From the IMG/VR virus record IMGVR_UViG_3300041411_000178, positions 1 through 64,000 of that record: 64,000 nucleotides of DNA; one strand, 5' to 3'. Every line of letters starts with the position of its first letter. Positions within the stretch are counted from its first letter, which is position 1. Under the pieces are notes generated by a model. The model did not search any database, had not been told where the DNA came from, and was given only the letters and a program-made list of their open reading frames with translations. Made by a program: the position numbers and the translations under genes. This document shows positions 3,101 through 48,030 of the stretch, piece after piece.

Positions 3101-6100
3101 ACGGCATCACCGAACCGAGGGTCTGGTGAACCTGTTTGGCGACCTTGTATACGTCTTGACTGACAGCATCGTCGTAGTCCTTTAACGACTTCAGCTTAAC
3201 CACATCCAGACAGGCCATGTAGGTCAGGTACACCGGTTTGAAACGACCGTTGAACCAACTGAAGATGCTGCCAAGTTGTTGCTTGTCTTTCGGGTCAGTG
3301 ATGAACGCTTGCAGGATCTCTTGTAGTGGAGCATCTTTGGAGAACGACGCACGACCGTTACCGATCACCACGTAGTTGGTAAGCTTCTCCTCGATCTGCA
3401 AGATCTTCTTGCCCAAGTCGCTGTCAGGATCCGATACACCGTACTGTGTCATCCGGAGGTCGAACTGTTTCCCCGAGCCTCGTTTGACATAACGGTAGAT
3501 CCCGTAACCAATTGCACCTACAGCAACAGCCGCCAGCACATACGGGTTAAGCAACAGCGGAGCCATTGTAGTCCAGGCACCTGCCAACAGCGGTGTAGCC
3601 GCAGTCGCCATGGCACCCAACCCAATGTCCACACCTGCTGCCGCAGCAACCCCAGTAGCCATTTGGTAACCACCAATTACAGTGGTGGCAGTGGTGGCAA
3701 TATCTCCGATCTGGTTCAGCGCGCCGCCTTCGTCAATGAAGCCTGTGTTAACCAGCGCATCAACGCCCAAGCCCACTGCCAGACCAGCACCCACCTTCAT
3801 GCCACCTTTTGCAACGCGCCCACGAGGAGCCTTGCGATCACGGAGCTGTTTTGCGCGCTCTGCTTTCGTACGCTTCTTCCCGCGCAGATGGTCAAAGGTA
3901 TCAACACCCGCACCCGTCAGACTGCCTGTGCTAACGAGGGTGTAGATACCCTTCGCAATTGCCGCAATCCCTGTGGCCATAAACGGAAGCACTTTAATAC
4001 CGATGTTGGCAAAGGTACCGAGTGTCTTGAAACTGTTCCACAGCGTGCCCGTGAAGAACTTAGTAAGACCGAAGATCCCACCAGCGATAGCACCCAGACC
4101 GTCTTTCAACAGACCGAAGATACCCTGGCTTTCTTTCTTCTCCTTCTTACCACCGCCACCAAAGAAGCCCATACCCTGAGACATCTTAATCAAGGCATCC
4201 TGAGCGTCTTCGGCTTTCTTCTCCTTAGCCTTTTCCAACTTGTCGGCACGGGAGTTAAGACGGTTGTTCTCTTCGGGCTGCTCACCCAATTGCTTACGGA
4301 TACGTGCTTTGATTTGCTCGGCAACATTCCCGAAGCTGGCGTCCTTAGGCTTGGCATCTTCCGCCTCCCGGCGTTCCAATTCTTCAGGCGATACTTGAGC
4401 CTGTTGAGCACCCTTTGGAATCTCCAGCTTTTCCTGAGGTGCCGATGGTGCAGAGGCTGTGGTTTTCAACTTAACTTTCAGCTTAGGAGGTTTAACGCTC
4501 GTTACCGGAACGTTGACGTTCTCATCCCCCACCGGTGTATCCACTGTCGCGCCTGGCATCTCCAGTGCGTAACCCCAGTGCTTCAGCAGCAAGTGGTAGA
4601 TACGGTCGACCGAGTTAACGATCGGGCTGTAGTCAGCCTTGAAGGCCTTTACAGTGGCATCCTTGGCCTTACCGAATGCAGGACCCGCTTTCTCCCGGGC
4701 TTTGTTGAACAGGTCGAGACCCCATTCTCCCAGTTTCTTGCTAGCAGCACCCAGCTTGTTAACGCTCACACCCATCGAGGTACGCAGACCACGATCGTAC
4801 TCTTCCTGGGTAATGATTATGTCACCGTTCTTGTCGTAGACCGGTCCGTCGATCTCATGCCAGCCTGTCAGCTGAACCGCCTCACCACCCTCACCACGTT
4901 TCCAATACTCACCGGCAGCAAAACGCTTACCTACGAGCACAGGTGATTTCTCACCCTCCTTGTAAACGTCCATCTGGTGGAAGCGATTAACGATACGGTC
5001 TTTCAGGGCCACAGCACGACCGAATGGATCAACCCACTTGAACGCCCGCATAGCAAAGTCACGGATCTTGCTCAAACCGCTGAGCAATACTTCCTTGTTC
5101 TCCTTGGTAAACAGTTTACCGGCCAGACGACGTGCACCAATAATGGTGTCGTTGGTCTTGTCCTTAACGCTACCAGTGATCTGCTTCCACGACGTAATGA
5201 GGAATCCTTTCGTTGCGTCGTAGTAGTTACGGTTGGCCAGTTTGTTCGCTTCCAGGATCGGGGTATCAGAACCCTCCTCATAAAGGTCTTCACTGTCCAG
5301 AGCAGCACGGGTTTTCGACATGCTGTGAATCTTGCCGTAAGCCAAGGCTACCGCAGCACCACCACCCAGCAATGCAGCCGCTTTAGGGTCGTGGATTGCA
5401 TACGCTGCCAAACCACCCAACAGACCACCCAATACCAAAGGCTGAGCATCCAGGAGTTTATCAACCCCTTTGTTGAACATGTCCTTCAGGTTGGTTGCTT
5501 TCAGACGTTCAATGATCGAACGCTTACCGGCACTGATGTCGTGCTTGTCTTCGGAGGTAGGTGGTTTACCACTACCCGGTTGGTTGTGAAGGATACGAGT
5601 CAGGAGGTCATTACGCTCCACACCCATTTCCACCAGACGCTTCACCTGTTCATTTAGGCTGGTCATGCCAGCGTTCAACGGATCGAGGTTCAACATCTGA
5701 GCCAGCGGGTTGCCTGGACCTCCCATGTTGTTAATGGCTGTCTTCAAATCGCCCATGCTTGCCAGGGATTCAGTCAGCTTGTCCATTCCTTGAACCTTAA
5801 CACCCTCTGGAGACTCCTCTCCGGGGATTACAGGCGTTCTGTTACCGAAGGTCGGCACAGTGTAAGGGAAGCCACCAAAGCTCCCTGGACGAGTCGGTAG
5901 GGGGGTACGATCCGGGATCTTCGTATTACGGCGATTGGGGTCGGCAATGTACGAAGCGATAGCATCCTTGATCATGTCCATGTTGATGTCATCACGGTTA
6001 TACTCATCCGTGACAATCAACCCCGATTCTTTCAAGGCATCGTAACTACCGGTGCCCTTATGAATGTCCAACTGTGCAGCAATGTCAGGAACCAGGTTAC

Positions 6101-8108
6101 CCAGGCTCTTAACGGCATCGGCCACACCCACAACGTTCTTACGGGCCTTTTCAGTTGGCAGGTAGCCCGCCATCTTGATGCGGTTGGCATCAGAACCCGT
6201 TTCGAAGTCAGCGATGTGTTTGTCGGTAATGTCGAACGCAGCTTTCATGGCACGACGGATTTCAGCAGCAACCTTCGGACTAACGCCCGCATGCTCATCC
6301 AGCTTCAAGAAGTTCCAAGGCGTGAACGCCTCTTCCTTGTCGCTACCCATGATCAGTTCCATCGACAGCGCTTTCTTGGCCTCAGGGCTGAGTGCACCTA
6401 ACCCCAGTTGGTCAATCGTGTCTGTGATGTTGTTGGAGGACTGAGCCACCGAACTGAAGCTGTTGCGGTCGAGAACCTTGTTAACAACGTTGTTAACCTT
6501 TTGGTCGTGAGTAATGAAGCGGGCCTTTACGTAGTCATACGACATCGGCTTGAGCTTGTCTTCACCCGTCCGGATCTTCTCCAGCGACAGGTGGATCTGG
6601 CTCATCCACTGTGGAATGATTTCGTTCAGCGTACGGTCACTGCGACGGCTCCAGTGAGTTTGTTCGTAGCTGTCAGCCAAAGTACGATTGGTCAGCGAGT
6701 AACGACTACCACTGTTAGACCACGAGTTCTCGTACAACGACCCCAGACCCTTGTTAGCAGTCTTCTTCAGGGTGTTGAGAACTTCCCACTCCAACTTCGG
6801 CGTAGGCTTAGCACCCGGTGGCAACGAAGCCAGGTACTCGTCGTAGTCTTCATGACCGTTAACGTCCATACCACCGACGTAGTGACGCTGCATGGCGTTA
6901 ACCAGCCCAGCTGCGTTACCCGTGGTGTAGGTTGCGACGTTACCCAGATCCTCCATTCGCTTATAGGCGTCTTCTGCCCACTTCGCTTGTTTCGGATAGT
7001 TCTTCTTGAACTTGGCGAGGTACTCACGTGCTCTGCCCGACTTCATAATGCGTGGCAGTTGGCTAATAAACAAACCAGCCGCAGCATTACCTGCGATGTC
7101 ACCGAGGTTAAGGGTCATGCCCTCAGTCATCTCAGTGGCCATGCGCAGAGAGCCTACAACGTCGCCTACAGCCCCGATCGTGTCACTCCGTGCATCCTTA
7201 CCGAACTTGTCGTTAATGAACTCAGAGATGCCACCGAACTTGCTCTTGACGCTGCTGAAGAACTGCGAACGGATTTCCTTACGGATAGCCTGGCTGTGAG
7301 AGGTCTTCTCATAGTCCGACATCTTCGAGAACTCACGAATACTCTTCAGTTCACTGATGACGCGGTGTTGAGCCGCTTCCTGGAACTTGTAGTACTTCGC
7401 GTTCGTCAGGTACATCCGTGTCATGACGTTCAGCTGCATGGCATCGCTACGGGCTTGTACCCGACGCTGATGATCCAACAGCTGTTCCATGAGTTGGTTG
7501 TTGCGTACCAGGGAACGGTTCAGCGTGTTCATGCTGCCGATGGTACGACCACCCACCTCGGCCATCATGTCCATGGTGCGGTCGGCGATGGTCTCCATGG
7601 TGTTGCGTTCTAGGAGGGAGTTAGCCTCGCTAGCTTCCATGGCCATCTTGACCTGATCTTCGCTGACGTCTTCCATTCGAGGGGTGCTATCACCCTCAGA
7701 AAAGTCGGTCTTTTCCCAGTCAGAAAAATCGTGGGAACTGAACTTCATCAGCTGATCGGAGATTTTATTAGGACCCCCTTTACCGAGTTTGGTTCCGGCC
7801 CTTTTTGCGAGGTACTGGAGGTCTTGTACCGTCTGGTAACTATCTCCCTTAATTTCCTCCATTACTTCGCGACGACGCTGGTTTAACTGAGCGACGTTAC
7901 TGAATGCGCCAAGCCAAGTATTGGGCAAAACCATTTTGAGGGTGTTAACCCTGGCATCGGTGTCACCTACGGTCTTGCCGACGACACCCGAAAGGAAGCC
8001 GGTAGCAAAGCTTCTGATAAAGCCCGCTTTGGGTTTATCAAAATCGTCGTCAAAGTCTAGATCGCCACCAAAGGGATCGTCGTCCCATGAATCGAAATCA
8101 TCGGCCAT
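111..8108 (-). CDS. Giant tail-associated peptidoglycan hydrolase / tape-measure-like protein (phiKZ gp181-like) with GH19 and peptidase M15-like domains
   Basis: 2665 aa; Gly/Ala hydrophobic segments; GH19 motif GDGWKYRGRGLVQLTGR; SKHALGLALDF...HVH zinc motif; divergent from vRNAP beta' as in phiKZ-like phages. Confidence 0.85.
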   Translation of the reverse strand: MADDFDSWDDDPFGGDLDFDDDFDKPKAGFIRSFATGFLSGVVGKTVGDTDARVNTLKMVLPNTWLGAFSNVAQLNQRRREVMEEIKGDSYQTVQDLQYLAKRAGTKLGKGGPNKISDQLMKFSSHDFSDWEKTDFSEGDSTPRMEDVSEDQVKMAMEASEANSLLERNTMETIADRTMDMMAEVGGRTIGSMNTLNRSLVRNNQLMEQLLDHQRRVQARSDAMQLNVMTRMYLTNAKYYKFQEAAQHRVISELKSIREFSKMSDYEKTSHSQAIRKEIRSQFFSSVKSKFGGISEFINDKFGKDARSDTIGAVGDVVGSLRMATEMTEGMTLNLGDIAGNAAAGLFISQLPRIMKSGRAREYLAKFKKNYPKQAKWAEDAYKRMEDLGNVATYTTGNAAGLVNAMQRHYVGGMDVNGHEDYDEYLASLPPGAKPTPKLEWEVLNTLKKTANKGLGSLYENSWSNSGSRYSLTNRTLADSYEQTHWSRRSDRTLNEIIPQWMSQIHLSLEKIRTGEDKLKPMSYDYVKARFITHDQKVNNVVNKVLDRNSFSSVAQSSNNITDTIDQLGLGALSPEAKKALSMELIMGSDKEEAFTPWNFLKLDEHAGVSPKVAAEIRRAMKAAFDITDKHIADFETGSDANRIKMAGYLPTEKARKNVVGVADAVKSLGNLVPDIAAQLDIHKGTGSYDALKESGLIVTDEYNRDDINMDMIKDAIASYIADPNRRNTKIPDRTPLPTRPGSFGGFPYTVPTFGNRTPVIPGEESPEGVKVQGMDKLTESLASMGDLKTAINNMGGPGNPLAQMLNLDPLNAGMTSLNEQVKRLVEMGVERNDLLTRILHNQPGSGKPPTSEDKHDISAGKRSIIERLKATNLKDMFNKGVDKLLDAQPLVLGGLLGGLAAYAIHDPKAAALLGGGAAVALAYGKIHSMSKTRAALDSEDLYEEGSDTPILEANKLANRNYYDATKGFLITSWKQITGSVKDKTNDTIIGARRLAGKLFTKENKEVLLSGLSKIRDFAMRAFKWVDPFGRAVALKDRIVNRFHQMDVYKEGEKSPVLVGKRFAAGEYWKRGEGGEAVQLTGWHEIDGPVYDKNGDIIITQEEYDRGLRTSMGVSVNKLGAASKKLGEWGLDLFNKAREKAGPAFGKAKDATVKAFKADYSPIVNSVDRIYHLLLKHWGYALEMPGATVDTPVGDENVNVPVTSVKPPKLKVKLKTTASAPSAPQEKLEIPKGAQQAQVSPEELERREAEDAKPKDASFGNVAEQIKARIRKQLGEQPEENNRLNSRADKLEKAKEKKAEDAQDALIKMSQGMGFFGGGGKKEKKESQGIFGLLKDGLGAIAGGIFGLTKFFTGTLWNSFKTLGTFANIGIKVLPFMATGIAAIAKGIYTLVSTGSLTGAGVDTFDHLRGKKRTKAERAKQLRDRKAPRGRVAKGGMKVGAGLAVGLGVDALVNTGFIDEGGALNQIGDIATTATTVIGGYQMATGVAAAAGVDIGLGAMATAATPLLAGAWTTMAPLLLNPYVLAAVAVGAIGYGIYRYVKRGSGKQFDLRMTQYGVSDPDSDLGKKILQIEEKLTNYVVIGNGRASFSKDAPLQEILQAFITDPKDKQQLGSIFSWFNGRFKPVYLTYMACLDVVKLKSLKDYDDAVSQDVYKVAKQVHQTLGSVMPFPYSIVAKIDPDTPLLGEKTTVVRCNNLLEELKKYIDRKTDTSADAEAIKTPQGVEAMKKEQAALQAVLAQPRGFFDSNDKLQAVIKAQDRLNEIDTQLAQLNGGYKVSKVVGEVFIKDLLPDNRPVDMLTGIRLACYGNDQDLTWRVEAVLKLERYCESLIVIADGGAQFKGQVGDMFGIFKEAFRLDKGDADNWCRWFKDRFMPTLLNYFNLIQNYRRGNPGVVWRSLSVTARYEIAKALVETKVEPGAGLIVPIWNVRAAPFKDAVSPGKPDRVDRMLDVLGEASTTAKLKDPEKEAGKTNTQSWAKAISPHKTGGDFTTKRANVDDVSKARNSRDVGLGGQYGTNTSRGSGTGNTYNLGGAYQTPGNSYGYQPLTGDSDTSHLDLSGVQAADGQDNGVKVPKQLAEQLIIREMLKQGFTDPRAIAEMLALTNYETEGFGRTVENMRYTTPENLLKTFREVTSLAQARALVAAGPVAIANTVYGGGKGQTLGNIAPGDGWKYRGRGLVQLTGRAQYARIGQQLGIDLVNNPELASNDPNVMAAIAVNFYKNSKLLQSITQDGNFGRAATGLNGGNELPGMPKRFQLYTSYLQQLQSGQLKADDAAAQGTNQAPSQGAGSMYGGGGSNPAPTIGTGNTPQIGAAPGGGSRNAGAYSTPPSLMAPGGGGADYSGNYGNGAPSEPGSLVGGGTGINSSGLRLKSGEAIAGGDAHPGIIRLCQLIQSQVPNFRYFSALNDAFHKNKKPNSKHALGLALDFTLTNGATGAGQAMSIVAGILRTANMGPNDFLLLNEYAKASAGATGGHVHVGFKSKEAADKFAQAAGAAQPAGQDTTAGGTVTAKDQAYDPGQMPSTPPDTTTVPTPAMKSNAPAPGGNQVAPGAGGGAIPGPYTSLPLPGQGGSTENPNGPVAAPGSTPQGSKQPLPEGYGKPVPKQQATAQQPAPADPGGLMEKLTTVVGEGTGKQDTTNQLLQQIAGLLKSMESNSKPASPAVTI

Positions 8109-37476: not shown

Positions 37477-40400
37477 ATGGACACAACTGAATCTGACAAT
37501 ACATCAGCCGAAGCACGGCTAAAGTTTGCAAAAGAGTTAGTGGAGTATTTGGGTGCTCAGAATCTGCCACCTGAGCTGATCGACGATCGCAAGAACCGGG
37601 TGGATTGGGAAAAGCGTACCGAAGACGAATTGGTCATGGCTCACTTCAATGAAGACAGCCTGAGCAAGATCAAGACCGTTCGTTTCCTTAAGGACTTTCC
37701 TCGTTACCAGGCGGCCGCTGACCGCACTACCAAGAACACCAGCTTTATCCGGACGGCAGAGATCTTCCGGCAGCAGGGGATCAAGAACTACTTCTTCCTG
37801 CTGCAACTGAACAACCCGGCTTTGATCGGGGTGGACCCGTACGACGAGAACTTGACCAACGAACAGAAGGTCATGGTCATGCACGAATGTGAGACCAACT
37901 TCTGGTATTTCCTTCGTGAGGTTTGTAAGCTGCGCGCTGATCGTCAGTTCTTGGCTAACCGGGGTAACATCAGTTTCATCTGGAACTACCTGAACCACAT
38001 CACCCAGTACATGATCATGCCTCGTCAACAAGGCAAGTACCAGGACGATAACGATAAGGTTCGTAAAGCAGACGGGACCTGGGTGCGTATCGGTGATCTG
38101 CAAGCGGGTGATCAAGTCATCGACCGTTACGGTAAAGAGTCCACGGTAATTGGTATCCATGCTCAAGGCATTAAGCGCTTGTACCGGGTTCACACCAGTG
38201 ACGGTCGTTATGTCAGCGCAGGACCTGAGCACCTCTGGACATTGGCAGATCATAGCCGTACTGTAAATGACGATCCAGTCTGGGACGATTACACTACCGC
38301 AGAAATGATCACCAAGCTCAAGGATGATGTAAAGCTCGAACTCCCGTTGATCGAAGCGGAGAAGGGCGTCAAGCAGAACCTGGCAATTGACCCTTATGTG
38401 ATGGGCACACTTATTGGGGGTCAACGCATTGGTGGTTTCATCCTCATTAAGAAAGTCTCTGAGTCTGCCGATGCCTGGATTGAAGAGAACCTGCCTGAAA
38501 GCCTGGAGCTGGTGAAGAAGGGCAATCGTCGCGAGATCCATTCAACCGACGAGAATGTCAAGATCAGCTTCGATCCGGACATGGGTCTGCCGGCTAACTA
38601 CCTGGAAGGGGCTCTGGAAGATCGTCTGGCCGCGCTGCAAGCGTTTCTCGACCAAGGAGCAATCGGTGAGGAGGGTGTGGTCTACAACACCACCAGCAGG
38701 CTTGTAGGCGGTCACGTTCAGTACCTGGCCCGTAGCTTGGGCGGTACGGCTTCCAAAGCGGGTAGCAAGATTACAGTTACACTGCCGCATTCGATGGCAC
38801 TGTTCAAGTACAAGCATGTTGAGGAAGAGTTCGTTTTCCCTAACCGTTTGTTTGTAGAGCGCATCGAGTATCATGGTGAAGCACCGTGCACCTGCATTGA
38901 GGTGGATAACGAAGATCACCTTTATGTCACCGACGACTTCCTGGTCACGCACAACACGGTCTCCGTGCAAGTGATTGCGTTCTGGTTGACGTACATCATG
39001 GGGCGTGGCTACAAGTCTCACCTGGTAACCCTGAAGTCGGATAACCGTGCTCAGTTCATTGACGCGATCAAGAAGATCCGGACATGTCTGCCGAAGTACC
39101 TGGTTAACCCAACCTGGAAGGACAAGGACGCGGGTAACTACCTGACGTATAAAGCGTTTGGGGAGGAGCACGTTAACACCCTAACCATCTCAGTACCCCA
39201 GATGGGTGAAGACGCCGCAGGCGACCTTGGACGGGGTCTCACGGTAGGTACCACGAACTACGACGAGCCAGGTTACATCAACTGGATCGAGGCGATCATC
39301 AACGGATGCTCTCCTTCTGCTTTGACAGAGATGGAGATTTGTCGTGACAGCGGTATTCCTTACGGGATCAGTTACATCACGACACCGAACACGACCCTGC
39401 ACCCAAGTGGCGCATTCATGTTTGAGAAACTGATGACGTCGACGGAGTGGCGTGAGAAGTTCTTCGACTCGTACAGCGAGAGTCACCTGAAGATGCGCTT
39501 GTTGAAGGCGTCTCCTCGTAAGACCACCTCGCCGTCTGTGGCCCTTGTGTATAACTACCTGCAACTGGGTAAAGACAAGGCCTGGGTACGCGAGACGATC
39601 GACAGCCTGAACCTCAGCCTTGCTAAGGCCAAGATCGACTTGCTCCTCATGTGGGTTGAAGACGGTGAGAACCGTGTGTTCGATGACATCACTCGTGAAG
39701 CGATTAACAACGTGAAGCGGGATAAGGTCTGGAGTAAGGAGTATCGTGACAGTGGTCTGTTTATCGACTTCTTTGTCACGCAGCAAGAACTGCTGGAGAT
39801 GGCGAAGAAGAGTTATAATGACTTCTTCCTCATTGGGGTGGATACCTCGTCGGCTATCAACAAGGATGCTTGTACGCTGATTATCCGCAGTATGAAGACT
39901 GGTAAGGTCATTGGGGTGGGTCGTTATCAGTTGGCATTCTTGGACGACGTGACGGGCATTATCGTCGACATGTTGGCCACTTTGGAAAACAGCCTGCTGG
40001 TGATTGAGCGTAACTATGCTCACCACATGATCGACAACCTGCTGGTTATGCTGCCGGCCAAGGGGATGGACCCATTCACTCGCATCTACAACACGGTCTT
40101 CCAAGATCCTGTTAACCATGCGAAGGAATACGAGGCAGTGCAGCACACCAAGTTTGCCCACCGCAGTAAGAGTTTCTACCTGAAGTACAAGCAGTTCTTC
40201 GGGTTCATCACGACCTCTACTTCACGTCAAGTGTTGTATGGCCTGATTCAGGAAGCTGTGGGTAACACAGGGTATGGCCTGCACTATGATCGGCTTGCTG
40301 ATGAGTTGATCAACCTCAAGACCCGAGGCGACCGGATTGACCACGATAGCAAACAGCACGATGACTTGGTTATCGCCTGGCTGCTGACGTACTGGTTCAT

Positions 40401-40740
40401 TAAGCTGGGTATGAACAAACCGATGTACGGAATCCCGACTGGGATTGCCCTCACGGAAACTCGTAACCTGCTCGATGCCGGTAAGCAGAAGAATGCTCCT
40501 GAAGTTGACCCAAGTGTTGTTTCGTTCTTGGACAACATCAAGAAACGTGTACAGAAGTTGACGGACGAGTTGTTGAACACCAACGACAATATCCTCGCCA
40601 TGAGGTTGGAGGCTGAGATCAACAAGCTCAGCAGACTGCTCCCACCTGAAACGGCTAAACTCCTGACCGTGGATACCTTGATCGAGGAGGCTAAGCTCGA
40701 AAGGGCTAAGCGTATCTTGAGAGAACGTAAGCGCGCATAA
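37477..40740 (+). CDS. terL: Terminase large subunit, intein-containing
   Basis: FWYFLRE; Walker A PRQQGK/T split by the intein; GRGLT, YDEP Walker B; nuclease IGVDTS and HDDLVIAW. Confidence 0.92.
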   Translation: MDTTESDNTSAEARLKFAKELVEYLGAQNLPPELIDDRKNRVDWEKRTEDELVMAHFNEDSLSKIKTVRFLKDFPRYQAAADRTTKNTSFIRTAEIFRQQGIKNYFFLLQLNNPALIGVDPYDENLTNEQKVMVMHECETNFWYFLREVCKLRADRQFLANRGNISFIWNYLNHITQYMIMPRQQGKYQDDNDKVRKADGTWVRIGDLQAGDQVIDRYGKESTVIGIHAQGIKRLYRVHTSDGRYVSAGPEHLWTLADHSRTVNDDPVWDDYTTAEMITKLKDDVKLELPLIEAEKGVKQNLAIDPYVMGTLIGGQRIGGFILIKKVSESADAWIEENLPESLELVKKGNRREIHSTDENVKISFDPDMGLPANYLEGALEDRLAALQAFLDQGAIGEEGVVYNTTSRLVGGHVQYLARSLGGTASKAGSKITVTLPHSMALFKYKHVEEEFVFPNRLFVERIEYHGEAPCTCIEVDNEDHLYVTDDFLVTHNTVSVQVIAFWLTYIMGRGYKSHLVTLKSDNRAQFIDAIKKIRTCLPKYLVNPTWKDKDAGNYLTYKAFGEEHVNTLTISVPQMGEDAAGDLGRGLTVGTTNYDEPGYINWIEAIINGCSPSALTEMEICRDSGIPYGISYITTPNTTLHPSGAFMFEKLMTSTEWREKFFDSYSESHLKMRLLKASPRKTTSPSVALVYNYLQLGKDKAWVRETIDSLNLSLAKAKIDLLLMWVEDGENRVFDDITREAINNVKRDKVWSKEYRDSGLFIDFFVTQQELLEMAKKSYNDFFLIGVDTSSAINKDACTLIIRSMKTGKVIGVGRYQLAFLDDVTGIIVDMLATLENSLLVIERNYAHHMIDNLLVMLPAKGMDPFTRIYNTVFQDPVNHAKEYEAVQHTKFAHRSKSFYLKYKQFFGFITTSTSRQVLYGLIQEAVGNTGYGLHYDRLADELINLKTRGDRIDHDSKQHDDLVIAWLLTYWFIKLGMNKPMYGIPTGIALTETRNLLDAGKQKNAPEVDPSVVSFLDNIKKRVQKLTDELLNTNDNILAMRLEAEINKLSRLLPPETAKLLTVDTLIEEAKLERAKRILRERKRA
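38038..38955 (+). mobile_element. Class 3 intein (306 aa) in the TerL Walker A motif, with a degenerate LAGLIDADG domain
   Basis: Inserted between GK and T; ends THN/T; Trp-Cys-Thr triplet (EHLW, TCIEV, VTHN); DPYVMGTLIGG and LQAFLD remnants. Confidence 0.88.
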
Positions 40741-40745
40741 ACCAA

Positions 40746-40777
40746 ACCCTGGAGCCCCCGCAAGGAGGCTCCAGGGT
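40746..40777. terminator. Bidirectional terminator with GCAA loop
   Basis: ACCCTGGAGCCCCC-GCAA-GGAGGCTCCAGGGT between convergent genes. Confidence 0.8.
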
Positions 40778-40791
40778 AAGGGTCGTATTCG

Positions 40792-41472
40792 TTATGGCGA
40801 GCTGTGGGTAACCAAGATGCTCTTGATGATGCAGACGGAGCCGTCATCGACTGGGGTGTCTGGGGAATAATCAACCTGGTTGTACACACCGCCGTGGAAT
40901 TGGAGTAATTGGCGTTGCCAGGAGGAATCCATTTGCAGGTTGCACGGTTCGAATGCTACACCGTTGCAAGTCCCGTTGATCTGTACTTTACCGCTACGGG
41001 TTACCCCGATGTTCAGTTTGAACTTGGCACCCAGGGGTACATCACGCTGAATGCTGACGTTAACGATGTCTGGGTTAACAAAGCTCTTGCGGAAGCCGGC
41101 CGTGATATTGCCGCGATTCCAGAACACCTTGAGCGGTGGGGTGGTGGCGTCTTTGACATGGATCTGTCCGATAACCACCTTGTCAGCATGGTTAACTTTG
41201 GAAAGGATCATCTCCTGACGATTCCAATGACGGTCAGCACTGGAGAGTGACCAGTACTCGGCTTCTTTCCATTCACAGCGTGTACGTTTGGTGCTCTTGC
41301 TCGACGCACCTTGAGTAGGGGCTGACAACTGGAGGGAACCGTCTTCCAGTAAACAAGCAACGTTGGGATAAAGATCCAGGATTTCAAGAGCGGGCATTTC
41401 GAGGGCTACCAACGACTTCGCCGAGACGGGCAAAGGGGTAGCGATGGTGAAAGTGCTAAGGTCAATAGACAT
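40792..41472 (-). CDS. Polysaccharide lyase family 7 (alginate lyase-like)
   Basis: RTRCEWKE, VIGQIH and FHGGVYNQ correspond to the PL7 motifs RxELR, QIH and YFKAGxYxQ. Confidence 0.85.
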   Translation of the reverse strand: MSIDLSTFTIATPLPVSAKSLVALEMPALEILDLYPNVACLLEDGSLQLSAPTQGASSKSTKRTRCEWKEAEYWSLSSADRHWNRQEMILSKVNHADKVVIGQIHVKDATTPPLKVFWNRGNITAGFRKSFVNPDIVNVSIQRDVPLGAKFKLNIGVTRSGKVQINGTCNGVAFEPCNLQMDSSWQRQLLQFHGGVYNQVDYSPDTPVDDGSVCIIKSILVTHSSP

Positions 41473-41504
41473 GGTAGTCTCGCATGTTGGCTAGTAGTTC
41501 TTAT

Positions 41505-41544
41505 TAACCGCTCTCCTAGCCCGTGAAGACTAAGAGAGTGGTTA
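41505..41544 (-). terminator. Hairpin/terminator
   Basis: TAACCGCTCTCCTAG...CTAAGAGAGTGGTTA imperfect stem. Confidence 0.55.
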
Positions 41545-41563
41545 GGGGAGGAGTTACATAAAA

Positions 41564-41995
41564 TCAGAACCATTCGGTCCGTTCGATAATGATGTTGAGT
41601 GTCGTCTCCATACAGGACAGTTGTGACACCATCAGCTGTATTTCCCAATCAGTAACGTGGAAGGTATCCACATCATTGATCTCTTGTTTCAGTGTTGCGA
41701 TGTCATGCTCCAGTTGGACCTTCTTGGCGAAGAGCCGTTGTTGCTCTGGAGTGTACGTCCCCATATTCCCCATGTTCAGATAAGCATTTTCATGCTGCTC
41801 CTTGGGAGCCCAGGAGATGTAACCTTGGTGGTCAGGGTGATTTGGTTTACCGCCGTCCAAATACTCGACCAGATAGCCTGGTTCAGCGCCATCTTCATCA
41901 GCTGGCATCTCCCAGCCTCTGTAATCGTTGTACACCGATTTTGTCATCGGCTTTGACTTAACGATTTTCGTTCCTACGAAGTGTTGAAGATCCAT
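41564..41995 (-). CDS. Two-domain phage protein (GTK..PMT/GYISW.P domain plus helical crAss001_48-like domain)
   Basis: FVGTKIVKSKPMT, GYLVEY.DG, YISWAPK; C-terminal QQRL...QL..M...L.IIIER. Confidence 0.7.
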   Translation of the reverse strand: MDLQHFVGTKIVKSKPMTKSVYNDYRGWEMPADEDGAEPGYLVEYLDGGKPNHPDHQGYISWAPKEQHENAYLNMGNMGTYTPEQQRLFAKKVQLEHDIATLKQEINDVDTFHVTDWEIQLMVSQLSCMETTLNIIIERTEWF

Positions 41996-42010
41996 GAATG
42001 GTCTCCGGTG

Positions 42011-42577
42011 TTAAGGGTTGAGAAGCATCCCAATCTCAGAGCGACCGCCGTTACCAAACTCGTATTGAACATACTTGAAACGAGACATGGCGTCGCCCAT
42101 CCGTTGGGCACGTGTTTCAAACAGCTCGGTGTAGCCTTCCACAAGATCTTCCTCATCCGTTCCTTTCACAAGGATAACACCCGCAGGATAAGCGACCCCA
42201 CCCAGAGATTGCAACATCTCCAGGTTTTCCTTCAAGACAGTCTGGAAGGAATCTACCGTGTAGTCCATCCAACGCATGTCATGAATCAACCCGCCTTTGA
42301 CGAGCACAATTTCACACTCGTCCAGGCAGGGCAGTAAGGTTTCTTTGTAGAACTTTGAACGGGCCTCAAGAAGAGCCACAATCTTTTCCTCGTTGCTCTT
42401 GTCGGGGTGTGTAAGCGTCATCCAGAGTTCGCGGTTTGCGCCCAAGGCATCGGATCCCACACCGACGTCAGTACAAATCGCAACCTTCTTGCCCTGTAGG
42501 GTAAGTCGATCTTTGATTTGATCAATGGCCGCATTTACGTTCAGCTCGTTTTGACCATCCACGTTAAAGTAATGCAT
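42011..42577 (-). CDS. Degenerate thymidylate-kinase-fold protein
   Basis: Topology echoes TMK (NVDG..., LLEARS...LLPCL...IVLV, PAGVIL) but there is no GKT P-loop. Confidence 0.5.
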   Translation of the reverse strand: MHYFNVDGQNELNVNAAIDQIKDRLTLQGKKVAICTDVGVGSDALGANRELWMTLTHPDKSNEEKIVALLEARSKFYKETLLPCLDECEIVLVKGGLIHDMRWMDYTVDSFQTVLKENLEMLQSLGGVAYPAGVILVKGTDEEDLVEGYTELFETRAQRMGDAMSRFKYVQYEFGNGGRSEIGMLLNP

Positions 42578-42586
42578 TCAACCTCC

Positions 42587-43969
42587 TTACTCAAAATAGT
42601 CCTTGCTCAGGATACGCAGCACAATGTACAGACACAGTGCCGTGCGTACCAGTTGCACGGTTTGTTGGGTTTTGACCCCAGTACGTTCTTTGACGATTTC
42701 GTCACCCAGGGTTCGGATCACCTTAACGGTATCGTTCTTGCTTCGAGGGGCACCGTAGGCACCGCGCATCTTGATCAAGACGTCATAGACGTTGGTTTTC
42801 TTAATACCATTGGTATGCAGGTACTCAAACATGTGCTGAAGGACTGCATCAGCGAACTGTTTGTACTCCGGCTTCTTCGGGTTGTTGTACATCGTCGGGA
42901 ACTGCTGAATAACATACGCCAACTTATCGCGAGGGCAACCTTCCAGCGCATCCGCAGAGTACTTGATCAACTCGTCCTTGTAGAACGAGGTCTCCTCAGT
43001 GAGGATACGATCCAGGTAGAGACCAAACTGCGTGATCTCTTTGGTCTGCGTCTTCAAAGCCAGTTCGTCACCGAGGTTAACCTTGGCTCCGTCAATCCGC
43101 ACGATGTCAGTTTTGTTCTTGACGTCGTGGAAGACTTTGTTGATGTCGTTAATAGCCCGACGCAAACGGTTCTGGATATCACCGACCATGTAGACGATTT
43201 TCTTGTCGTCATCCATCTTGGAGAAAGCGTCGTAGTGGATACCCGTCTTCGGATTGATAATGAACTCAGCCCGAGCTTCGATCAGTGCACGCCAGCTACC
43301 GTAACGCTTGATGTCGTATTTCAGACTCAAGCGGTTGTAGGTTTCCATCGCCACTTCTTTCCGTGCCATGAACGGATAGTCGTTGTGAATGATCGAGGTC
43401 AAACACTTGTAGTGGTACATCGCCAGGATGTCGATCATGGCCTGGTGTTTGGTGTCCTTGCTCAGACTTGAGCGATTGACCCGATACAGCAGGTACGGAA
43501 TGGTCAGGTTGAAGGTATCACCCACCACACTCCATTCCTTGTTCACCGCTTTGGCTGCGTGCAGGTTTTCTTTGAGTTCCTCTTCATCAACGTCGAAGAT
43601 CTCAGAGAACCACTGGTTACGGTCGGCCGTCGTGAAGGTGATCTTGTGCAAACCCAGATACGGAGAACCGAAGAACTCCATATGACTGACCACGCCTACG
43701 GTCCGGGTTACGAACGAATAGACATAACGGCGAAGTGTCTTGGCCCACTTCTCGTCAACTACCAGGAAATCACCGAACGAGTTGCAGATGTCCAGGATCG
43801 CATGGTTGCTGTCGAAGTTGATGCCGTTGAGCAAAGCCTCAGCACCCGTGACCGACTGGATCTCTTGAGGCTCGATCGGGTACAGGTACAGTCCGCCTTG
43901 AGCGAGGATCGAGTGTTCCTCCAGACCTTCAAACAAACTGAAGATCGAGGGTTCAATGAAAGATGTCAT
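42587..43969 (-). CDS. Conserved jumbo-phage protein
   Basis: 460 aa, TGATG overlap with the upstream gene, conserved position between TerL and PhuZ. Confidence 0.7.
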   Translation of the reverse strand: MTSFIEPSIFSLFEGLEEHSILAQGGLYLYPIEPQEIQSVTGAEALLNGINFDSNHAILDICNSFGDFLVVDEKWAKTLRRYVYSFVTRTVGVVSHMEFFGSPYLGLHKITFTTADRNQWFSEIFDVDEEELKENLHAAKAVNKEWSVVGDTFNLTIPYLLYRVNRSSLSKDTKHQAMIDILAMYHYKCLTSIIHNDYPFMARKEVAMETYNRLSLKYDIKRYGSWRALIEARAEFIINPKTGIHYDAFSKMDDDKKIVYMVGDIQNRLRRAINDINKVFHDVKNKTDIVRIDGAKVNLGDELALKTQTKEITQFGLYLDRILTEETSFYKDELIKYSADALEGCPRDKLAYVIQQFPTMYNNPKKPEYKQFADAVLQHMFEYLHTNGIKKTNVYDVLIKMRGAYGAPRSKNDTVKVIRTLGDEIVKERTGVKTQQTVQLVRTALCLYIVLRILSKDYFE

Positions 43970-44817
43970 CAGAATCTCCTTGGTACGGCACGACGTACGG
44001 CATCAGTCACACGCTGACGGTCACTGTAGGCCATCCGCTTGGTCCATTCCGTAGTGAGGTATTCGTGGTAGTCTTTCCAGGCATCACGATATTCCATGAT
44101 GTCGTCTTTGATGTCACTCAAAGAAACACCGCTACGGATAATCGCTTCCTGGGTTGGTCGACGGCAGGTCCGGTAGATGTGTGCCTTAACGGCCAACTCT
44201 ACCAGGTGAGCAAAGTGTTCATACTGGCGTGTCGAAATACTGCTCAGACCTTCATCGTACTCCAGGATCATCTTGGCCGACATCGAGTAAGTACCCGAAC
44301 TCAAACCAAAGATCACGAAGCAGTTGTTACCGGTCATATGGATGTTGTTGTAGGTCACCGGCATCTGACGGTTGGAGCTGAGGCTGTCCACCAGCGCTTC
44401 AGTCATGTCCGAGACGCTACCTTGTCCACACATCTCGCTGCTGTTAACCGTCATACCCAGCATGCCCGTCGACGAGGTCATCGAACCCAGGTAGATCTCG
44501 GTCACGGAAATGATCTTGCGACCACCGGTAACAATGTCCGGTACGTTTACTTCAATACATGCGTTACCCAGGTCCCGGATACGAGCACCGGTCAGGTCGA
44601 TGAACTCGGTCTTGCCACCGTTGGCATTACAGGCTGGCAGTACAGTACGGTGAATTACTTTCTCACGGATACCCTGTTCCACAGTCGTGTGGTTAACCAG
44701 GTTGTACCAGTTGCCTGCGAAGTTACCATTGGGGGCTTCGAAAGCAAGTTTAAGCAGGTAGTCATCGATGTCACAGTTGGTGACCCGATTGATGGCATAA
44801 TCCACCGCATTACTCAT
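43969..44817 (-). CDS. Conserved jumbo-phage (virion) protein
   Basis: 282 aa; TATG late-promoter-like motif about 35 nt upstream. Confidence 0.7.
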   Translation of the reverse strand: MSNAVDYAINRVTNCDIDDYLLKLAFEAPNGNFAGNWYNLVNHTTVEQGIREKVIHRTVLPACNANGGKTEFIDLTGARIRDLGNACIEVNVPDIVTGGRKIISVTEIYLGSMTSSTGMLGMTVNSSEMCGQGSVSDMTEALVDSLSSNRQMPVTYNNIHMTGNNCFVIFGLSSGTYSMSAKMILEYDEGLSSISTRQYEHFAHLVELAVKAHIYRTCRRPTQEAIIRSGVSLSDIKDDIMEYRDAWKDYHEYLTTEWTKRMAYSDRQRVTDAVRRAVPRRF

Positions 44818-45298: not shown

Positions 45299-45841
45299 AT
45301 GACAACGATTTGCTGGGATGGGAAGAAACTTGTCAGTGATTCACAGGTGACAGCCGGCATGCAGATCTCACCTGGGGGACTGCGGAAGATCTACACCCCT
45401 GAAGAAGGTGAGTATTGGGATGTGAACGGCCATCGTGTTTTGGCTGCTGGCATTTCGGGGGACGGTAAGTCGATTGAATACGTCAGGGAACACCTGCGAG
45501 TTGGTGTGACCTACAAAACGAGAATTGAGGATGTAGACGAACTCAACTTCTCTGCACTGCTGATCGCTGAAGACGGCAATTGCTATCGCTGGGGAATGAC
45601 TAAGCGTCAGGGTCGTCCTCTGATGACAGACATCGTACCACTGCTGCCTCCTACTGCCGTAGGTTCTGGGCAAACCTTTGCACTGGCAGTGATGTCGATT
45701 GGCAAACCCGCAGAAGCCGCTGTACGCGCCGCTATCCGTCACGACAAGTGGTCCGGTGGCGATCTGCAAATCTGGGAAGTCCCACCTAAACCCGCCACCA
45801 AGTCCGTTCGACCAGTGGTTACCGAACCTACACCCGCTTGA
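45299..45841 (+). CDS. HslV/proteasome-beta-like Ntn hydrolase, copy 1
   Basis: N-terminal MTTI, SDSQ, RKI, AVGSG: Thr1/Asp/Lys/GSG pattern. Confidence 0.8.
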   Translation: MTTICWDGKKLVSDSQVTAGMQISPGGLRKIYTPEEGEYWDVNGHRVLAAGISGDGKSIEYVREHLRVGVTYKTRIEDVDELNFSALLIAEDGNCYRWGMTKRQGRPLMTDIVPLLPPTAVGSGQTFALAVMSIGKPAEAAVRAAIRHDKWSGGDLQIWEVPPKPATKSVRPVVTEPTPA

Positions 45842-45856
45842 TCAGGAAAACACATC

Positions 45857-46468
45857 ATGTCAACAGCCGCATTCGACGGTAAACTTCTGGTCACTGACTC
45901 GGCCATCCACACCGGCGGGCAAATCAGCCCCAGTGAGTTCCGCAAGATCTATACACCAGAAGAAAATGAGTACTGGGAGATCTGCGGTGTTAAAGCAATC
46001 GCATTTGCTCTGATCGGTACTCCCATTGTCTACCCGCAGTTCCGCAAGATATTGCAGGACGGCATGGATCACAGTTCTGACGCAACGGTATTTGACGGTA
46101 CATTCGAAGCCATTGTGGTGGGTGAAAACGGCGCCGGGTACCAGATCATCTTGTCGGAATCCAACAAGGAAGGCAAGAAGCAAATACTGCAAATCGTTCC
46201 AGGTACCGGATTCCTTGCCGTTGGGGACGGCGATCAATTCGCGTTGGCTGTAATGTCTGTCGGTAAGTCTGCTCGTGTGGGTGTCAAGGCGGCGATCAAC
46301 CTGTGCATTGAGAGCGGGGGCAATCTCCAGGTATTCGAAGTACCACCGCCACCTGAGACACCTTCTGTGCGTCCTAAGAAGGGGTACCCAACAACCGAAG
46401 AGTCGCTGGCCCAGCTTCGGGAATTGGTCAAGGAAGAAGAGCGTCAGGAAGCCAAAGCCAAGGCGTAA
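45857..46468 (+). CDS. HslV/proteasome-beta-like Ntn hydrolase, copy 2 (variant)
   Basis: Paralog of copy 1 (RKIYTPEE.EYW, FALAVMS.GK); starts MST and has GDG for GSG. Confidence 0.75.
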   Translation: MSTAAFDGKLLVTDSAIHTGGQISPSEFRKIYTPEENEYWEICGVKAIAFALIGTPIVYPQFRKILQDGMDHSSDATVFDGTFEAIVVGENGAGYQIILSESNKEGKKQILQIVPGTGFLAVGDGDQFALAVMSVGKSARVGVKAAINLCIESGGNLQVFEVPPPPETPSVRPKKGYPTTEESLAQLRELVKEEERQEAKAKA

Positions 46469-46477: not shown

Positions 46478-46696
46478 CTATGTGAACTCGTGAGTTTGCT
46501 CCTGCTTGAAGATAGTTAGCCCTGGCGTACCCGCGGGAATAGTTTGGAGTCCCCTACCCGCAACAGTTGGTTGTCCCCCATTAACGACCGGCTGTCCTGA
46601 CAAGTTATCGTTGGGAAAAGCTCCACCTGCCAAAGATATTTCCATCGTGCCCAGTCCTCCTAAACGGGGATTGGGTGCGGTGGGACTATTTTGCAT
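46478..46696 (-). CDS. Possible small Gly/Pro-rich protein
   Basis: 72-aa ATG ORF in an otherwise empty gap; weak SD. Confidence 0.3.
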   Translation of the reverse strand: MQNSPTAPNPRLGGLGTMEISLAGGAFPNDNLSGQPVVNGGQPTVAGRGLQTIPAGTPGLTIFKQEQTHEFT

Positions 46697-46856
46697 TTTG
46701 TTTTTTCTTACTCAGTAGCTATATTTTATACTTGCACACGCCGTCCGGTTTTTCTCGTAGCTGGGTTATCCGGAGGGGGTTTATTGGAGGTGGGTCCTAC
46801 TGTCCTTCGGTTTGCAGGTATTCTCACTCACAAGTGTTTAAGTCTTTTCTGAGGAC

Positions 46857-46895
46857 ACCCCCTGTTTGCCTCGTTTGCGGCAGGGGTTCTTTTTC
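46857..46895 (+). terminator. Intrinsic terminator upstream of the PhuZ promoter
   Basis: CCCCTG...CAGGGG stem followed by TTCTTTTT. Confidence 0.6.
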
Positions 46896-46951
46896 ACTTG
46901 TAGTCAGATTCTTAGGTAGTGTTGGCAATGGGTTGACGTCTTGTAAAAAGA

Positions 46952-46968
46952 TTTCAAGCCTACATTAC
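46952..46968 (+). promoter_or_regulatory. Early promoter of phuZ
   Basis: TTTCAAGCCTACATTAC. Confidence 0.8.
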
Positions 46969-47031
46969 CTGTGTGTTGACCATAAACGGTCTAACGAATT
47001 CTTCCAACTGGTAACTCAAAGAGAACTTCAC

Positions 47032-48030
47032 ATGAATGCGAATACTTCTGATCTGGCATATTTCCTCTGCGGTGGTACCGGGATCAACATCGGCGTGGCT
47101 CTGAAAAAGGGTACTCACACCGACAACAACAAAAACGCTTTCTTCGTGGGCCTGGACTCCTCGGACCGCAACAGCTCCAACGATCTGTTCGAAGTCGTGC
47201 AGATGGCCGTTGCCAACGATCCAGACCAGAAAGCCAAGGGCTCGGGTAAAGTCAAAGCGACCAACTACCCACAGGCTGAGCAGTTCGTGACTCAGTTCCT
47301 GACCAAGCACAAGCCGCGCGATTACAACATCATCGTCTGCTCCACCGGCGGTGGTACTGGTTCCATGCTGGCCTTCGTTCTGGCGCGCATGCTGTTCGAA
47401 CGCGATCAACTGGTTGTGCTGTGCTTCGTCAACGACAAGACCTCGCAGGTTGAAGAGATCAACGTCGTGAACAGCTACCGTTCGTACGCATCGCTGACCA
47501 CCCCAGGTTCGCTGAATCGCGTCGTTCCGTACATGGAATTCGACAACACCCTGACCAACACTCGCGGTGAAGTCAACCAGATGATCATCGACAAGCTCGA
47601 TGTGGCCAGCCTGTTCCTGACCAACGCGAACAAAGAGCAAGACCACACCGACCTGAAGAACCTGCTGAACTTCAGCAAGCACTACGGCGTTCCACCGTCC
47701 ATGTCGCGCATCCGCTTCTACGACGAAAACGGCGTGGCAGACTTCAAGGGCAAAGTGCCGGTTGCGGTCTCCTCCCTGTTCGAAAGCAGCGATGCGGTCA
47801 TCCCACGTTTCAACGGCACCGTGATCCGTTCCACCGGCGTGTTCGCTGACGGCGTTAAGCGTCCAAGCAACGCCAACGAACTGCACATGGTCCTGGACCA
47901 CGGCGAGGCTCTGAAAGAGCTGGAGAAACACATCGAAGCCATGGAAACCCGCAAGGTCGAAACTCAATCGTCCTTTACCCAGCAGAAGGATCTCTCTGCC
48001 GGCGCGGACGACAAAGGCTTCTTCCTGTAA
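47032..48030 (+). CDS. phuZ: PhuZ phage tubulin (332 aa; start is ATG 47032, not 46675)
   Basis: CGGTGINIG, GLDSS, GSGK, GGGTGS tubulin signature; start lies downstream of the early promoter. Confidence 0.93.
   Translation: MNANTSDLAYFLCGGTGINIGVALKKGTHTDNNKNAFFVGLDSSDRNSSNDLFEVVQMAVANDPDQKAKGSGKVKATNYPQAEQFVTQFLTKHKPRDYNIIVCSTGGGTGSMLAFVLARMLFERDQLVVLCFVNDKTSQVEEINVVNSYRSYASLTTPGSLNRVVPYMEFDNTLTNTRGEVNQMIIDKLDVASLFLTNANKEQDHTDLKNLLNFSKHYGVPPSMSRIRFYDENGVADFKGKVPVAVSSLFESSDAVIPRFNGTVIRSTGVFADGVKRPSNANELHMVLDHGEALKELEKHIEAMETRKVETQSSFTQQKDLSAGADDKGFFL

What the first reader, a model, noticed from the sequence alone, without database searches (positions are those of the whole stretch)
40792..41472. 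Stand-alone PL7 alginate lyase in a jumbo phage
Seen: all three PL7 motifs with a variant third motif (FHGGVYNQ), and no signal peptide or tail-fibre anchor. Known: alginate is the mucoid and biofilm polymer of Pseudomonas and Azotobacter; phage depolymerases are usually beta-helix tailspikes. Inference: a host-derived soluble enzyme released at lysis to clear biofilm matrix. It also points to the host genus.
Basis: partly seen in the sequence, partly recalled or inferred. Interest (0 to 1): 0.65.

Follow-up and report, generated by a model that had tools for sequence, protein, structure and literature searches.

The report
Soluble alginate-lyase-like gene in jumbo phage
A complete 224-kb soil phage, probably of Pseudomonas, carries a small, intact, single-domain family-7 polysaccharide (alginate) lyase gene, but relatives are already annotated in cultured Pseudomonas phages, so it is a solid yet fairly ordinary accessory gene.

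Summary
ORF 40792-41472 (-) encodes a 226-aa protein that is one PL7 domain end to end (Pfam PF08787, E 1.8e-36). It folds with high confidence as a PL7 jelly-roll: pLDDT 93, and TM 0.82 to PA1167. The Arg/Gln/His/Tyr catalytic set is intact. The third motif (QFHGGVYNQ) is variant, and the first (RCEWK) is also slightly off consensus. The His that replaces the canonical Lys is invariant in 202 relatives.

There is no signal peptide, anchor or beta-helix. The genome is a complete 224,004-bp phiKZ/EL-like jumbo phage from a rhizosphere metagenome.

The gene lies in a variable slot between a structural operon and the terminase gene, a slot that EL-like phage RU lacks. It is under strong purifying selection (dN/dS 0.06).

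All jumbo-phage copies form one clade. Two Pseudomonas chromosomal clades stand apart from it at about 55% identity, so recent capture from the host is not supported and the direction of transfer is unresolved. The 80 cellular relatives kept by the scan (best of 148) are all Pseudomonas, which supports the host inference.

Release at lysis to degrade alginate remains an inference. Psa21's homologue was annotated as PL7 in 2019, so this is a new member of a known kind.

The parts
40792..41472 (-). PL7 (Alginate_lyase2) gene. 226 aa, 24.9 kDa, single domain. Catalytic residues R65, Q103, H105 and Y197; H193 stands in place of the canonical Lys.
40746..40777 (-). Intrinsic-terminator-like hairpin (14-bp stem, 10 G-C pairs, T-rich tail). 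It lies 15 nt after the PL7 stop codon, in the 51-bp gap to the convergent terminase gene.
41505..41544 (-). Stable RNA hairpin in the 91-nt spacer upstream of PL7 (-25.1 kcal/mol, z -2.98). It has no T-run. It could be a processing or attenuation element that partly insulates PL7 from the genes upstream; its function is unknown.
41564..41995 (-). 143-aa protein of unknown function (phrog_872). Co-directional, and part of the block that EL-like phage RU lacks.
42011..42577 (-). 188-aa protein with no family match. Co-directional, and part of the block that RU lacks.
42587..43969 (-). Conserved phiKZ-like protein (phrog_2921), annotated 'putative structural head protein' in Erwinia phages Joad and RisingSun. 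Found in 290 phage records. It lies upstream in the same leftward gene string as PL7.
43969..44817 (-). DUF7484 protein (phrog_3179), the first gene of the leftward string.
37477..40740 (+). Terminase large subunit, 1087 aa, with an intein-like insert. It is convergent with PL7 and marks the other edge of the variable slot.

Best explanation
The gene encodes a catalytically competent, soluble, single-domain PL7 beta-elimination lyase. It belongs to a subfamily found only in Pseudomonas chromosomes and Pseudomonas-type phages. The subfamily is marked by APTxGASSKS, RxEW, QxHV and FHGG[VIL]YNQ, with His where other PL7 enzymes have Lys.

It is an accessory gene in a variable slot at the end of a leftward, structural-type gene string of an EL-like jumbo phage.

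The inferred mechanism is as follows. The enzyme is made in the infected cell. Having no export signal, it stays cytoplasmic until lysis. It is then released with the progeny and cuts the uronic-acid exopolysaccharide of the host, most likely alginate (polyM/polyMG, O-acetylated in Pseudomonas). Cutting lowers matrix viscosity, so virions can diffuse to neighbouring cells.

Shown: the fold, the domain architecture, intact catalytic residues, purifying selection, the phage context, and the restriction of relatives to Pseudomonas.

Inferred: the substrate, the timing of expression, release at lysis, and the benefit to the phage.
For: Family and fold:
- PF08787 matches full length, E 1.8e-36.
- AF2 model has pLDDT 93.2 and pTM 0.90.
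- Foldseek against the PDB: ranks 1-43 are alginate lyases, all PL7 or their close relatives except one PL7 glucuronan lyase (rank 13). The best are PA1167 (TM 0.82, E 1.5e-17) and A1-II' (TM 0.80).

Catalytic residues:
- They align to A1-II' R146/Q189/H191/Y284. H191 and Y284 are the residues mutated in the substrate-complex entries 2zaa and 2zab.
- R65, E67, Q103, H105, H193, Y197, N198 and Q199 are invariant in 202 subfamily sequences.

Selection and conservation:
- dN/dS is 0.06 against the orthologue in a 227.8-kb relative.
- Contigs from four independent studies lie across the gene, with base substitutions but no insertion or deletion reported inside it. The X3 contigs leave about 41332-41475 uncovered.

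Architecture and context:
- No signal, lipobox or Tat motif. One domain only.
- Strong terminator right after the gene. A structural-type gene lies upstream in the same string.
- Homologues sit on at least 19 contigs of 214-317 kb and in Psa21.
- In the small Pseudomonas phage AH02, a homologue lies two genes upstream of the holin.

Host:
- The 80 genome hits kept are all Pseudomonas.
Against: - No biochemical data exist for any member of this subfamily as far as the paper searches show.
- The canonical Lys and the first Tyr of the YxKAGxYxQ motif are replaced, so substrate binding at the + subsites may differ.
- PL7 includes glucuronan lyases (7nde).
- No expression data. The only 'RNA' runs holding relatives are probably DNA.
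- No virion proteomics, so a virion-borne role is not excluded.
- EL and RU, the nearest cultured relatives, do without the gene.
- The host is not cultured, and its alginate production is assumed from general knowledge of Pseudomonas.
Confidence: 0.55

Rival explanations
1. Virion-associated depolymerase. The small PL7 protein is carried on or in the particle, bound non-covalently to fibres or baseplate, and cuts a path through alginate at adsorption, as tailspike depolymerases do.
For: The gene ends a gene string that contains a protein annotated as a structural head or virion protein in relatives, next to packaging genes. In the P. putida phage Aura, the homologue lies beside a 'minor tail protein' gene.
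Against: There is no anchor domain, no beta-helix and no trimerisation module; the whole protein is the catalytic jelly-roll. Its genomic position differs among jumbo phages: among tRNAs and HNH genes in Psa21, and next to Macro, acetyltransferase and thymidylate synthase genes elsewhere. That pattern is not what a fixed structural part would show. In Aura the tail gene is on the opposite strand.
Confidence: 0.15
2. An active lyase with a substrate other than alginate: another 4-linked uronic-acid polymer of Pseudomonas (a uronic-acid O-antigen or capsule-like EPS) or glucuronan.
For: PL7 holds beta-glucuronan lyases. Trichoderma PL7A (7nde) matches the model at TM 0.78 and the family profile at E 7e-5. 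The + subsite motif is altered (K to H, Y to Q) and the change is invariant in the subfamily. The middle residue of QxH varies I/M/L/V, and a review treats that residue as a weak guide to specificity.
Against: The closest solved relative by sequence and by fold is the Pseudomonas alginate lyase PA1167. Alginate is the well-known uronic-acid exopolysaccharide of the genus (general knowledge).
Confidence: 0.15
3. Intracellular or periplasmic role during infection rather than after lysis. For example, it might cut nascent or retained alginate once the envelope is breached late in infection, or shut down the host's alginate output, so that progeny are not trapped.
For: There is no export signal. 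PA1167, the closest solved relative, is likewise a 222-aa single-domain protein.
Against: Alginate polymer is made at the inner membrane and handled in the periplasm (general knowledge; PMC13709232 describes periplasmic AlgL). A cytoplasmic enzyme therefore has no polymer to act on before the membrane is breached. Nothing in the sequence addresses this.
Confidence: 0.1
4. Inactive passenger gene or carbohydrate-binding, lectin-like protein that has lost catalysis.
For: Two of the three textbook motifs deviate from consensus. EL and RU lack the gene.
Against: The catalytic Arg, Gln, His and Tyr are invariant in 202 sequences. dN/dS is 0.06. The gene is intact in independent environmental samples and is kept across a deep phage clade.
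Confidence: 0.05

Closest known systems
PA1167 of Pseudomonas aeruginosa (PDB 1vav), PL7 alginate lyase
   Same: Single-domain jelly-roll of about 222 aa. It is the best match by sequence (E 1e-7 alone, 3e-13 with the profile) and by fold (TM 0.82). It shares the QIH motif and the catalytic Tyr.
   Different: Only about 23% identity. PA1167 has the canonical RSELR and YFKAGLYLQ motifs; the phage protein has RCEWK and QFHGGVYNQ. No P. aeruginosa member of the phage-type subfamily was among the 80 genome hits kept.
PSA21_405 (QBJ02929.1) of jumbo phage Psa21, annotated 'polysaccharide lyase family 7 protein'
   Same: 56.5% identity over the full length and the same single-domain build. It is in the same phage clade and in a jumbo Pseudomonas phage.
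   Different: Different phage genus (Tepukevirus, 305 kb) and different genomic context, among tRNA and HNH genes near the genome end. The genome announcement does not discuss it. It is uncharacterised.
Chromosomal 224-aa PL7 proteins of the Pseudomonas putida and fluorescens groups (e.g. P0067 of P. asiatica)
   Same: 50-57% identity. Same length, same signature motifs including FHGG[VIL]YNQ, and no signal peptide.
   Different: They form two clades separate from the phage clade. They sit in chromosomal neighbourhoods, and about half lie just downstream of an S24 LexA-like gene.
A1-II' of Sphingomonas sp. A1 (PDB 2cws, 2zaa-2zac), the mechanistic model for PL7
   Same: Same fold (TM 0.80). 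R146, Q189, H191 and Y284 all have counterparts.
   Different: About 20% identity. K280 corresponds to His, and Y278 to Gln.
Classical phage depolymerases (beta-helix tailspikes or tail fibres)
   Same: The presumed purpose is the same: getting phage through host exopolysaccharide.
   Different: No beta-helix, no N-terminal particle-binding domain, and only 226 aa. The fold class and the likely mode of delivery both differ.

Membership tests
Polysaccharide lyase family 7 (PL7; Pfam PF08787) | Significant sequence similarity to the PL7 catalytic module over its whole length | tested here: met
   PF08787 E 1.8e-36, 126.5 bits against a cut-off of 29.7, residues 3-223 on profile positions 1-225 of 225. 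PDB sequence hits are PA1167 and A1-II'.
Polysaccharide lyase family 7 (PL7; Pfam PF08787) | Beta-jelly-roll (beta-sandwich) fold | tested here: met
   AF2 pLDDT 93.2, nearly all beta. Foldseek ranks 1-43 are alginate lyases, all PL7 or their close relatives except one PL7 glucuronan lyase (rank 13), with TM up to 0.82. This rests on a predicted structure, not a solved one.
Polysaccharide lyase family 7 (PL7; Pfam PF08787) | Catalytic set: Arg and Gln (charge neutralisation), His and Tyr (base and acid), equivalent to A1-II' R146, Q189, H191, Y284 | tested here: met
   R65, Q103, H105 and Y197 align to these residues and are invariant in 202 relatives.
Polysaccharide lyase family 7 (PL7; Pfam PF08787) | Textbook consensus motifs RXEXR, QXH, YXKAGXYXQ (PMC8618178) | tested here: inconclusive
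   QIH is met. RCEWK keeps R and E, but the last R is K. QFHGGVYNQ keeps 6 of 9 positions, including the catalytic Tyr, but has Q for Y, H for K and G for A. These motifs describe characterised enzymes and do not define the family. Whether His can stand in for Lys is untested.
Polysaccharide lyase family 7 (PL7; Pfam PF08787) | Beta-elimination activity on alginate (or another polyuronate) | not testable with these tools
   Needs an enzyme assay.
Phage tailspike or tail-fibre depolymerase | N-terminal particle-binding domain plus a (usually trimeric) beta-helix catalytic domain | tested here: not met
   226 aa, one jelly-roll domain, with no extra N- or C-terminal region.
Jumbo phage, phiKZ/EL-like | Genome over 200 kb, with hallmark genes of the group | tested here: met
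   224,004 bp, direct terminal repeats, CheckV 100%. PhuZ tubulin, DUF7193, DUF7484 and phrog_2921 are present. Terminase and structural proteins are 55-70% identical to Elvirus RU and EL, with conserved gene order.
Secreted (Sec/Tat/lipoprotein) enzyme | N-terminal signal peptide | tested here: not met
   No basic n-region, no hydrophobic core, no lipobox or RR motif (a rule-based check rather than a trained predictor). The N-terminus is a strand of the fold.

The most novel reading that the evidence does not exclude
The FHGG[VIL]YNQ-type PL7 proteins are a lysis-coupled matrix-dissolving enzyme class of Pseudomonas and its phages. Jumbo phages have kept one clade of them for a long time. The chromosomal copies, about half of which sit directly behind an S24 LexA-like repressor gene, would then be domesticated phage genes, or SOS/lysis-induced enzymes that free cells or particles from alginate. 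Their invariant Lys-to-His change would reflect adaptation to O-acetylated, G-block-free Pseudomonas alginate, a substrate that most characterised lyases handle poorly.
Probability: 0.2. Interest if true: 0.6.

Novelty: new member of a known kind. Interest (0 to 1): 0.35.

Why it matters
Most alginate lyases that have been studied come from marine bacteria and were tested on non-acetylated algal alginate. A recent review names acetylated bacterial alginate as the main gap, and phage-encoded lyases as a source worth mining (PMC13709232).

This gene belongs to a compact enzyme clade of about 25 kDa, with no signal peptide, that Pseudomonas phages keep under strong selection. It is therefore a sensible candidate for an enzyme tuned to Pseudomonas alginate.

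It also shows that jumbo phages can carry a matrix-degrading enzyme that is not built into a tail spike. For this uncultured phage, it gives an independent pointer to the host genus.

None of this is very surprising to a specialist, and the family assignment was already made for Psa21.

Tried and rejected
- Megablast of 39000-43000 against 50,697 phage records found only RU, and only over the terminase. No near-identical cultured phage exists, or the window's own record is withheld.
- Paper searches found nothing on jumbo-phage or Pseudomonas-phage PL7 enzymes. The search for 'vB_PpuM' found nothing. The Psa21 announcement does not mention the gene.
- The IQ-TREE 'careful' run and a separate UFBoot run did not finish in time (one search failed on thread count). 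The conclusions rest on the quick PMSF tree with SH-aLRT and an independent FastTree.
- I considered that the lyase might travel with an alginate deacetylase. AH02's neighbour is annotated 'esterase', but neither it nor the 'aminohydrolase' has Pfam support. The window's genome has no GDSL/SGNH match. Idea dropped.
- NCBIfam has no model for the protein.
- Expression: no true RNA run holds the phage, and the 'RNA-Seq' wastewater run is probably DNA. No statement on transcription is possible.
- The direction of transfer could not be rooted, because the only outgroups to hand (Aura, AH02) are themselves phage genes on very long branches.
- The large representative protein search was not used, since the family was clear from Pfam and the word search.
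- No alternative genetic code was used.

Full report
**1. What is there**

The ORF 40792..41472 on the minus strand exists as described: 226 aa, ATG start.
- Pfam PF08787 (Alginate_lyase2, i.e. PL7) matches residues 3-223 to the whole 225-position profile at E 1.8e-36.
- PHROGs places it in phrog_31475, a family labelled 'unknown function' (E 4e-91).
- NCBIfam has no model for it.
- The only solved structure found by single-sequence search is PA1167, the small PL7 alginate lyase of P. aeruginosa (E 1e-7). A profile of 17 relatives raises this to 3e-13 and adds A1-II', Klebsiella AlyA, a fungal glucuronan lyase and AlyA5.

**2. Fold and active site**

An AlphaFold2 model built on that alignment is confident (pLDDT 93.2, pTM 0.90) and almost all beta. 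Foldseek against the PDB returns alginate lyases at ranks 1-43, all PL7 or their close relatives except one PL7 glucuronan lyase at rank 13. The best are PA1167 (TM 0.82, E 1.5e-17) and A1-II' (TM 0.80).

In the profile alignment to A1-II':

| This protein | A1-II' |
|---|---|
| R65 | R146 |
| E67 | E148 |
| K69 | R150 |
| Q103 | Q189 |
| H105 | H191 |
| Q191 | Y278 |
| H193 | K280 |
| Y197 | Y284 |
| Q199 | Q286 |

H191 and Y284 are the residues mutated to trap substrate in PDB entries 2zaa and 2zab (titles).

Measured against the textbook motifs RXEXR, QXH and YXKAGXYXQ (PMC8618178), the protein has RCEWK, QIH and QFHGGVYNQ.

Across 202 subfamily sequences, R65, E67, Q103, H105, H193, Y197, N198 and Q199 never change. 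The Lys-to-His replacement is therefore a fixed trait of the subfamily, not decay.

**3. Architecture**

The protein is the catalytic domain and nothing else. There is no basic n-region, hydrophobic core, lipobox or Tat motif (a rule-based check), and the first strands of the fold start at residue 8. There is no room for a particle-binding domain or a beta-helix. 'Stand-alone, no signal peptide, no anchor' is confirmed.

**4. The genome**

The window is the first 64 kb of a single 224,004-bp virus record with direct terminal repeats, rated 100% complete. The DNA is held in full by a rhizosphere metagenome run. Close relatives are held by soil, plant and wastewater runs from several studies.

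Nearby genes are a terminase large subunit, PhuZ tubulin, DUF7193, DUF7484 and phrog_2921. Gene order and 55-70% protein identity link the phage to Elvirus phages RU and EL of P. aeruginosa. It is a phiKZ/EL-like jumbo phage, uncultured, and of a lineage not represented among isolates.

**5. Local anatomy**

PL7 is the last gene of a leftward string:
- DUF7484 (43969-44817)
- phrog_2921 (42587-43969), annotated as a structural head or virion protein in some relatives
- a 188-aa protein (42011-42577)
- a 143-aa protein (41564-41995)
- PL7

The string runs head-on into the terminase gene. A 14-bp G+C-rich hairpin with a T-rich tail follows the PL7 stop codon (40746-40777). A stable hairpin without a T-run lies in the 91-nt spacer before PL7 (41505-41544; -25.1 kcal/mol, z -2.98).

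In RU, the distance from the terminase stop to the phrog_2921 homologue is about 560 bp, against about 1,850 bp here. RU has no homologue of PL7 or of the two small genes, and EL-type phages are absent from the tblastn hits. PL7 thus sits in a variable slot of an otherwise syntenic region.

A 227.8-kb environmental relative has the same arrangement. A 231-236-kb group has PL7 in the same slot but with different small neighbours. In 267-kb, 283-kb and Psa21-type phages the gene lies elsewhere. It is a mobile accessory gene.

**6. Selection**

Against the 227.8-kb relative, PL7 has dN/dS 0.06, so it is constrained like its neighbours (0.016-0.23). Its dS is 1.53, against 0.17-0.69 for the flanking genes, and amino-acid identity is 86% against 94-98%. 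The simplest reading is that one of the two phages exchanged its PL7 allele with a more distant phage.

Contigs from four other studies lie across the gene. They show many single-base differences in it, often spaced by multiples of three, and no insertion or deletion was reported inside it. In one run (X3) the contigs leave about 41332-41475 uncovered.

**7. Relatives and origin**

The word-index search found 297 homologues.
- The nearest (95%, 86%, 77% ...) are on contigs of up to 214-317 kb, and at least 19 clusters have such a longest contig.
- Named Pseudomonas chromosomal proteins of 224 aa follow at 54-55%.
- A scan of one genome per species (185,579 species) with the subfamily signatures gave 148 confirmed hits. 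The 80 kept are all Pseudomonas of the putida and fluorescens groups, at 50-57% identity.
- In 50,697 phage records, only 13 have a homologue: Psa21, nine P. putida phages of about 200 kb, P. koreensis phage AH02, and one faecal contig.

Trees (broader sampling; independent FastTree) give three well-supported groups:
- one clade with every jumbo-sized or phage-context sequence (33 rows; SH-aLRT 98; FastTree 0.98)
- a large Pseudomonas clade (39 rows; 95 and 0.97)
- a small P. fluorescens-type clade (7 rows; 96 and 0.98)

The order of the three groups is unresolved, and the available outgroups are phage genes on very long branches. The data show gene exchange between Pseudomonas and its phages. 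They do not show that this phage, or its recent ancestors, took the gene from a host. The bootstrap analyses did not finish, so support values are SH-like only.

**8. How it probably works**

- Shown: an intact PL7 enzyme gene under selection, without an export or anchoring device, in a lytic-type jumbo phage.
- Inferred: the enzyme accumulates in the cell, is freed at lysis, and cleaves host alginate by beta-elimination, easing the spread of progeny through the matrix.

Pseudomonas alginate is O-acetylated and polyM-rich (PMC13709232). That it lacks G-blocks is general knowledge, and the QIH motif is only a weak guide to specificity.

One parallel supports the lysis link: in AH02 the homologue lies two genes upstream of the holin.

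Rivals, none of which can be excluded without experiments:
- a virion-borne role
- another uronic-acid substrate, since PL7 includes glucuronan lyases
- a role before lysis
- loss of catalysis, which the conservation data make unlikely

**9. Comparison and novelty**

It works like, and is a member of, PL7. The fold, the similarity and the catalytic residues were tested and met. The strict motif consensus is only partly met, and activity is untestable here. It is not a tailspike depolymerase.

The homologue in Psa21 has been annotated as PL7 since 2019, although the announcement does not discuss it. A soil-virome preprint counts 33 viral PL7 genes. I found no paper characterising any phage PL7 of this type.

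Verdict: a new member of a known kind, of moderate-to-low interest. Its practical appeal is as a candidate lyase adapted to Pseudomonas alginate.

- Read laying received 4,001 letters.
- Only table 11 was used.
- The costly representative search was not run.

Noticed in passing
window 37477-40740 (+), insert roughly at nt 38029-39036: The terminase large subunit is 1087 aa and carries an intein-like insert. The piece spanning residues 185-520 hits solved DnaB, gp41-1 and Prp8 inteins (E 1.6e-5 to 5e-3), and the insert ends with a ...THNT motif. Phage RU's terminase aligns over the whole length, so it shares the insert.
   Followed up: partly
L004:6479-8675 and L090:7258-8675 (Pseudomonas chromosomes); 80 loci L010-L089: About half of the chromosomal PL7 homologues (40 of 80) lie within 1.5 kb downstream, on the same strand, of a Peptidase_S24 (LexA/repressor-like) gene, in at least two different chromosomal neighbourhoods. 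This suggests SOS- or repressor-linked control, or a prophage-remnant origin.
   Followed up: partly
window 40792-41472 vs L007:8001-8681: The PL7 allele is far more diverged from the closest relative (dS 1.53, 86% aa identity) than the flanking genes (dS 0.17-0.69, 94-98%). This points to allele exchange by recombination inside a conserved region.
   Followed up: yes
window 45299-45841 and 45857-46468 (+): Two adjacent paralogous HslV-like peptidase genes (phrog_1040; 37-40% identical to each other's counterparts) lie just upstream of PhuZ. RU shows matches for both at a single locus.
   Followed up: no
window 46675-48030 (+): The PhuZ ORF as listed is 451 aa from a GTG start, but the family matches only residues 125-448, and the relative's called gene is 332 aa. 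The true start is probably further downstream.
   Followed up: no
window 41505-41544 (-): A stable hairpin (z -2.98) lies in the spacer between the 143-aa gene and PL7. It has no T-run. It could be a processing or regulatory element.
   Followed up: partly
L003:3998-7034 (phage AH02): In this 39-kb Pseudomonas phage, a longer (285-aa) PL7 homologue sits between genes annotated 'aminohydrolase' and 'esterase', just upstream of the holin. Neither neighbour has Pfam support.
   Followed up: partly
window 111-8108 (-): A very long ORF of 2665 aa lies at the start of the genome. It was not examined.
   Followed up: no
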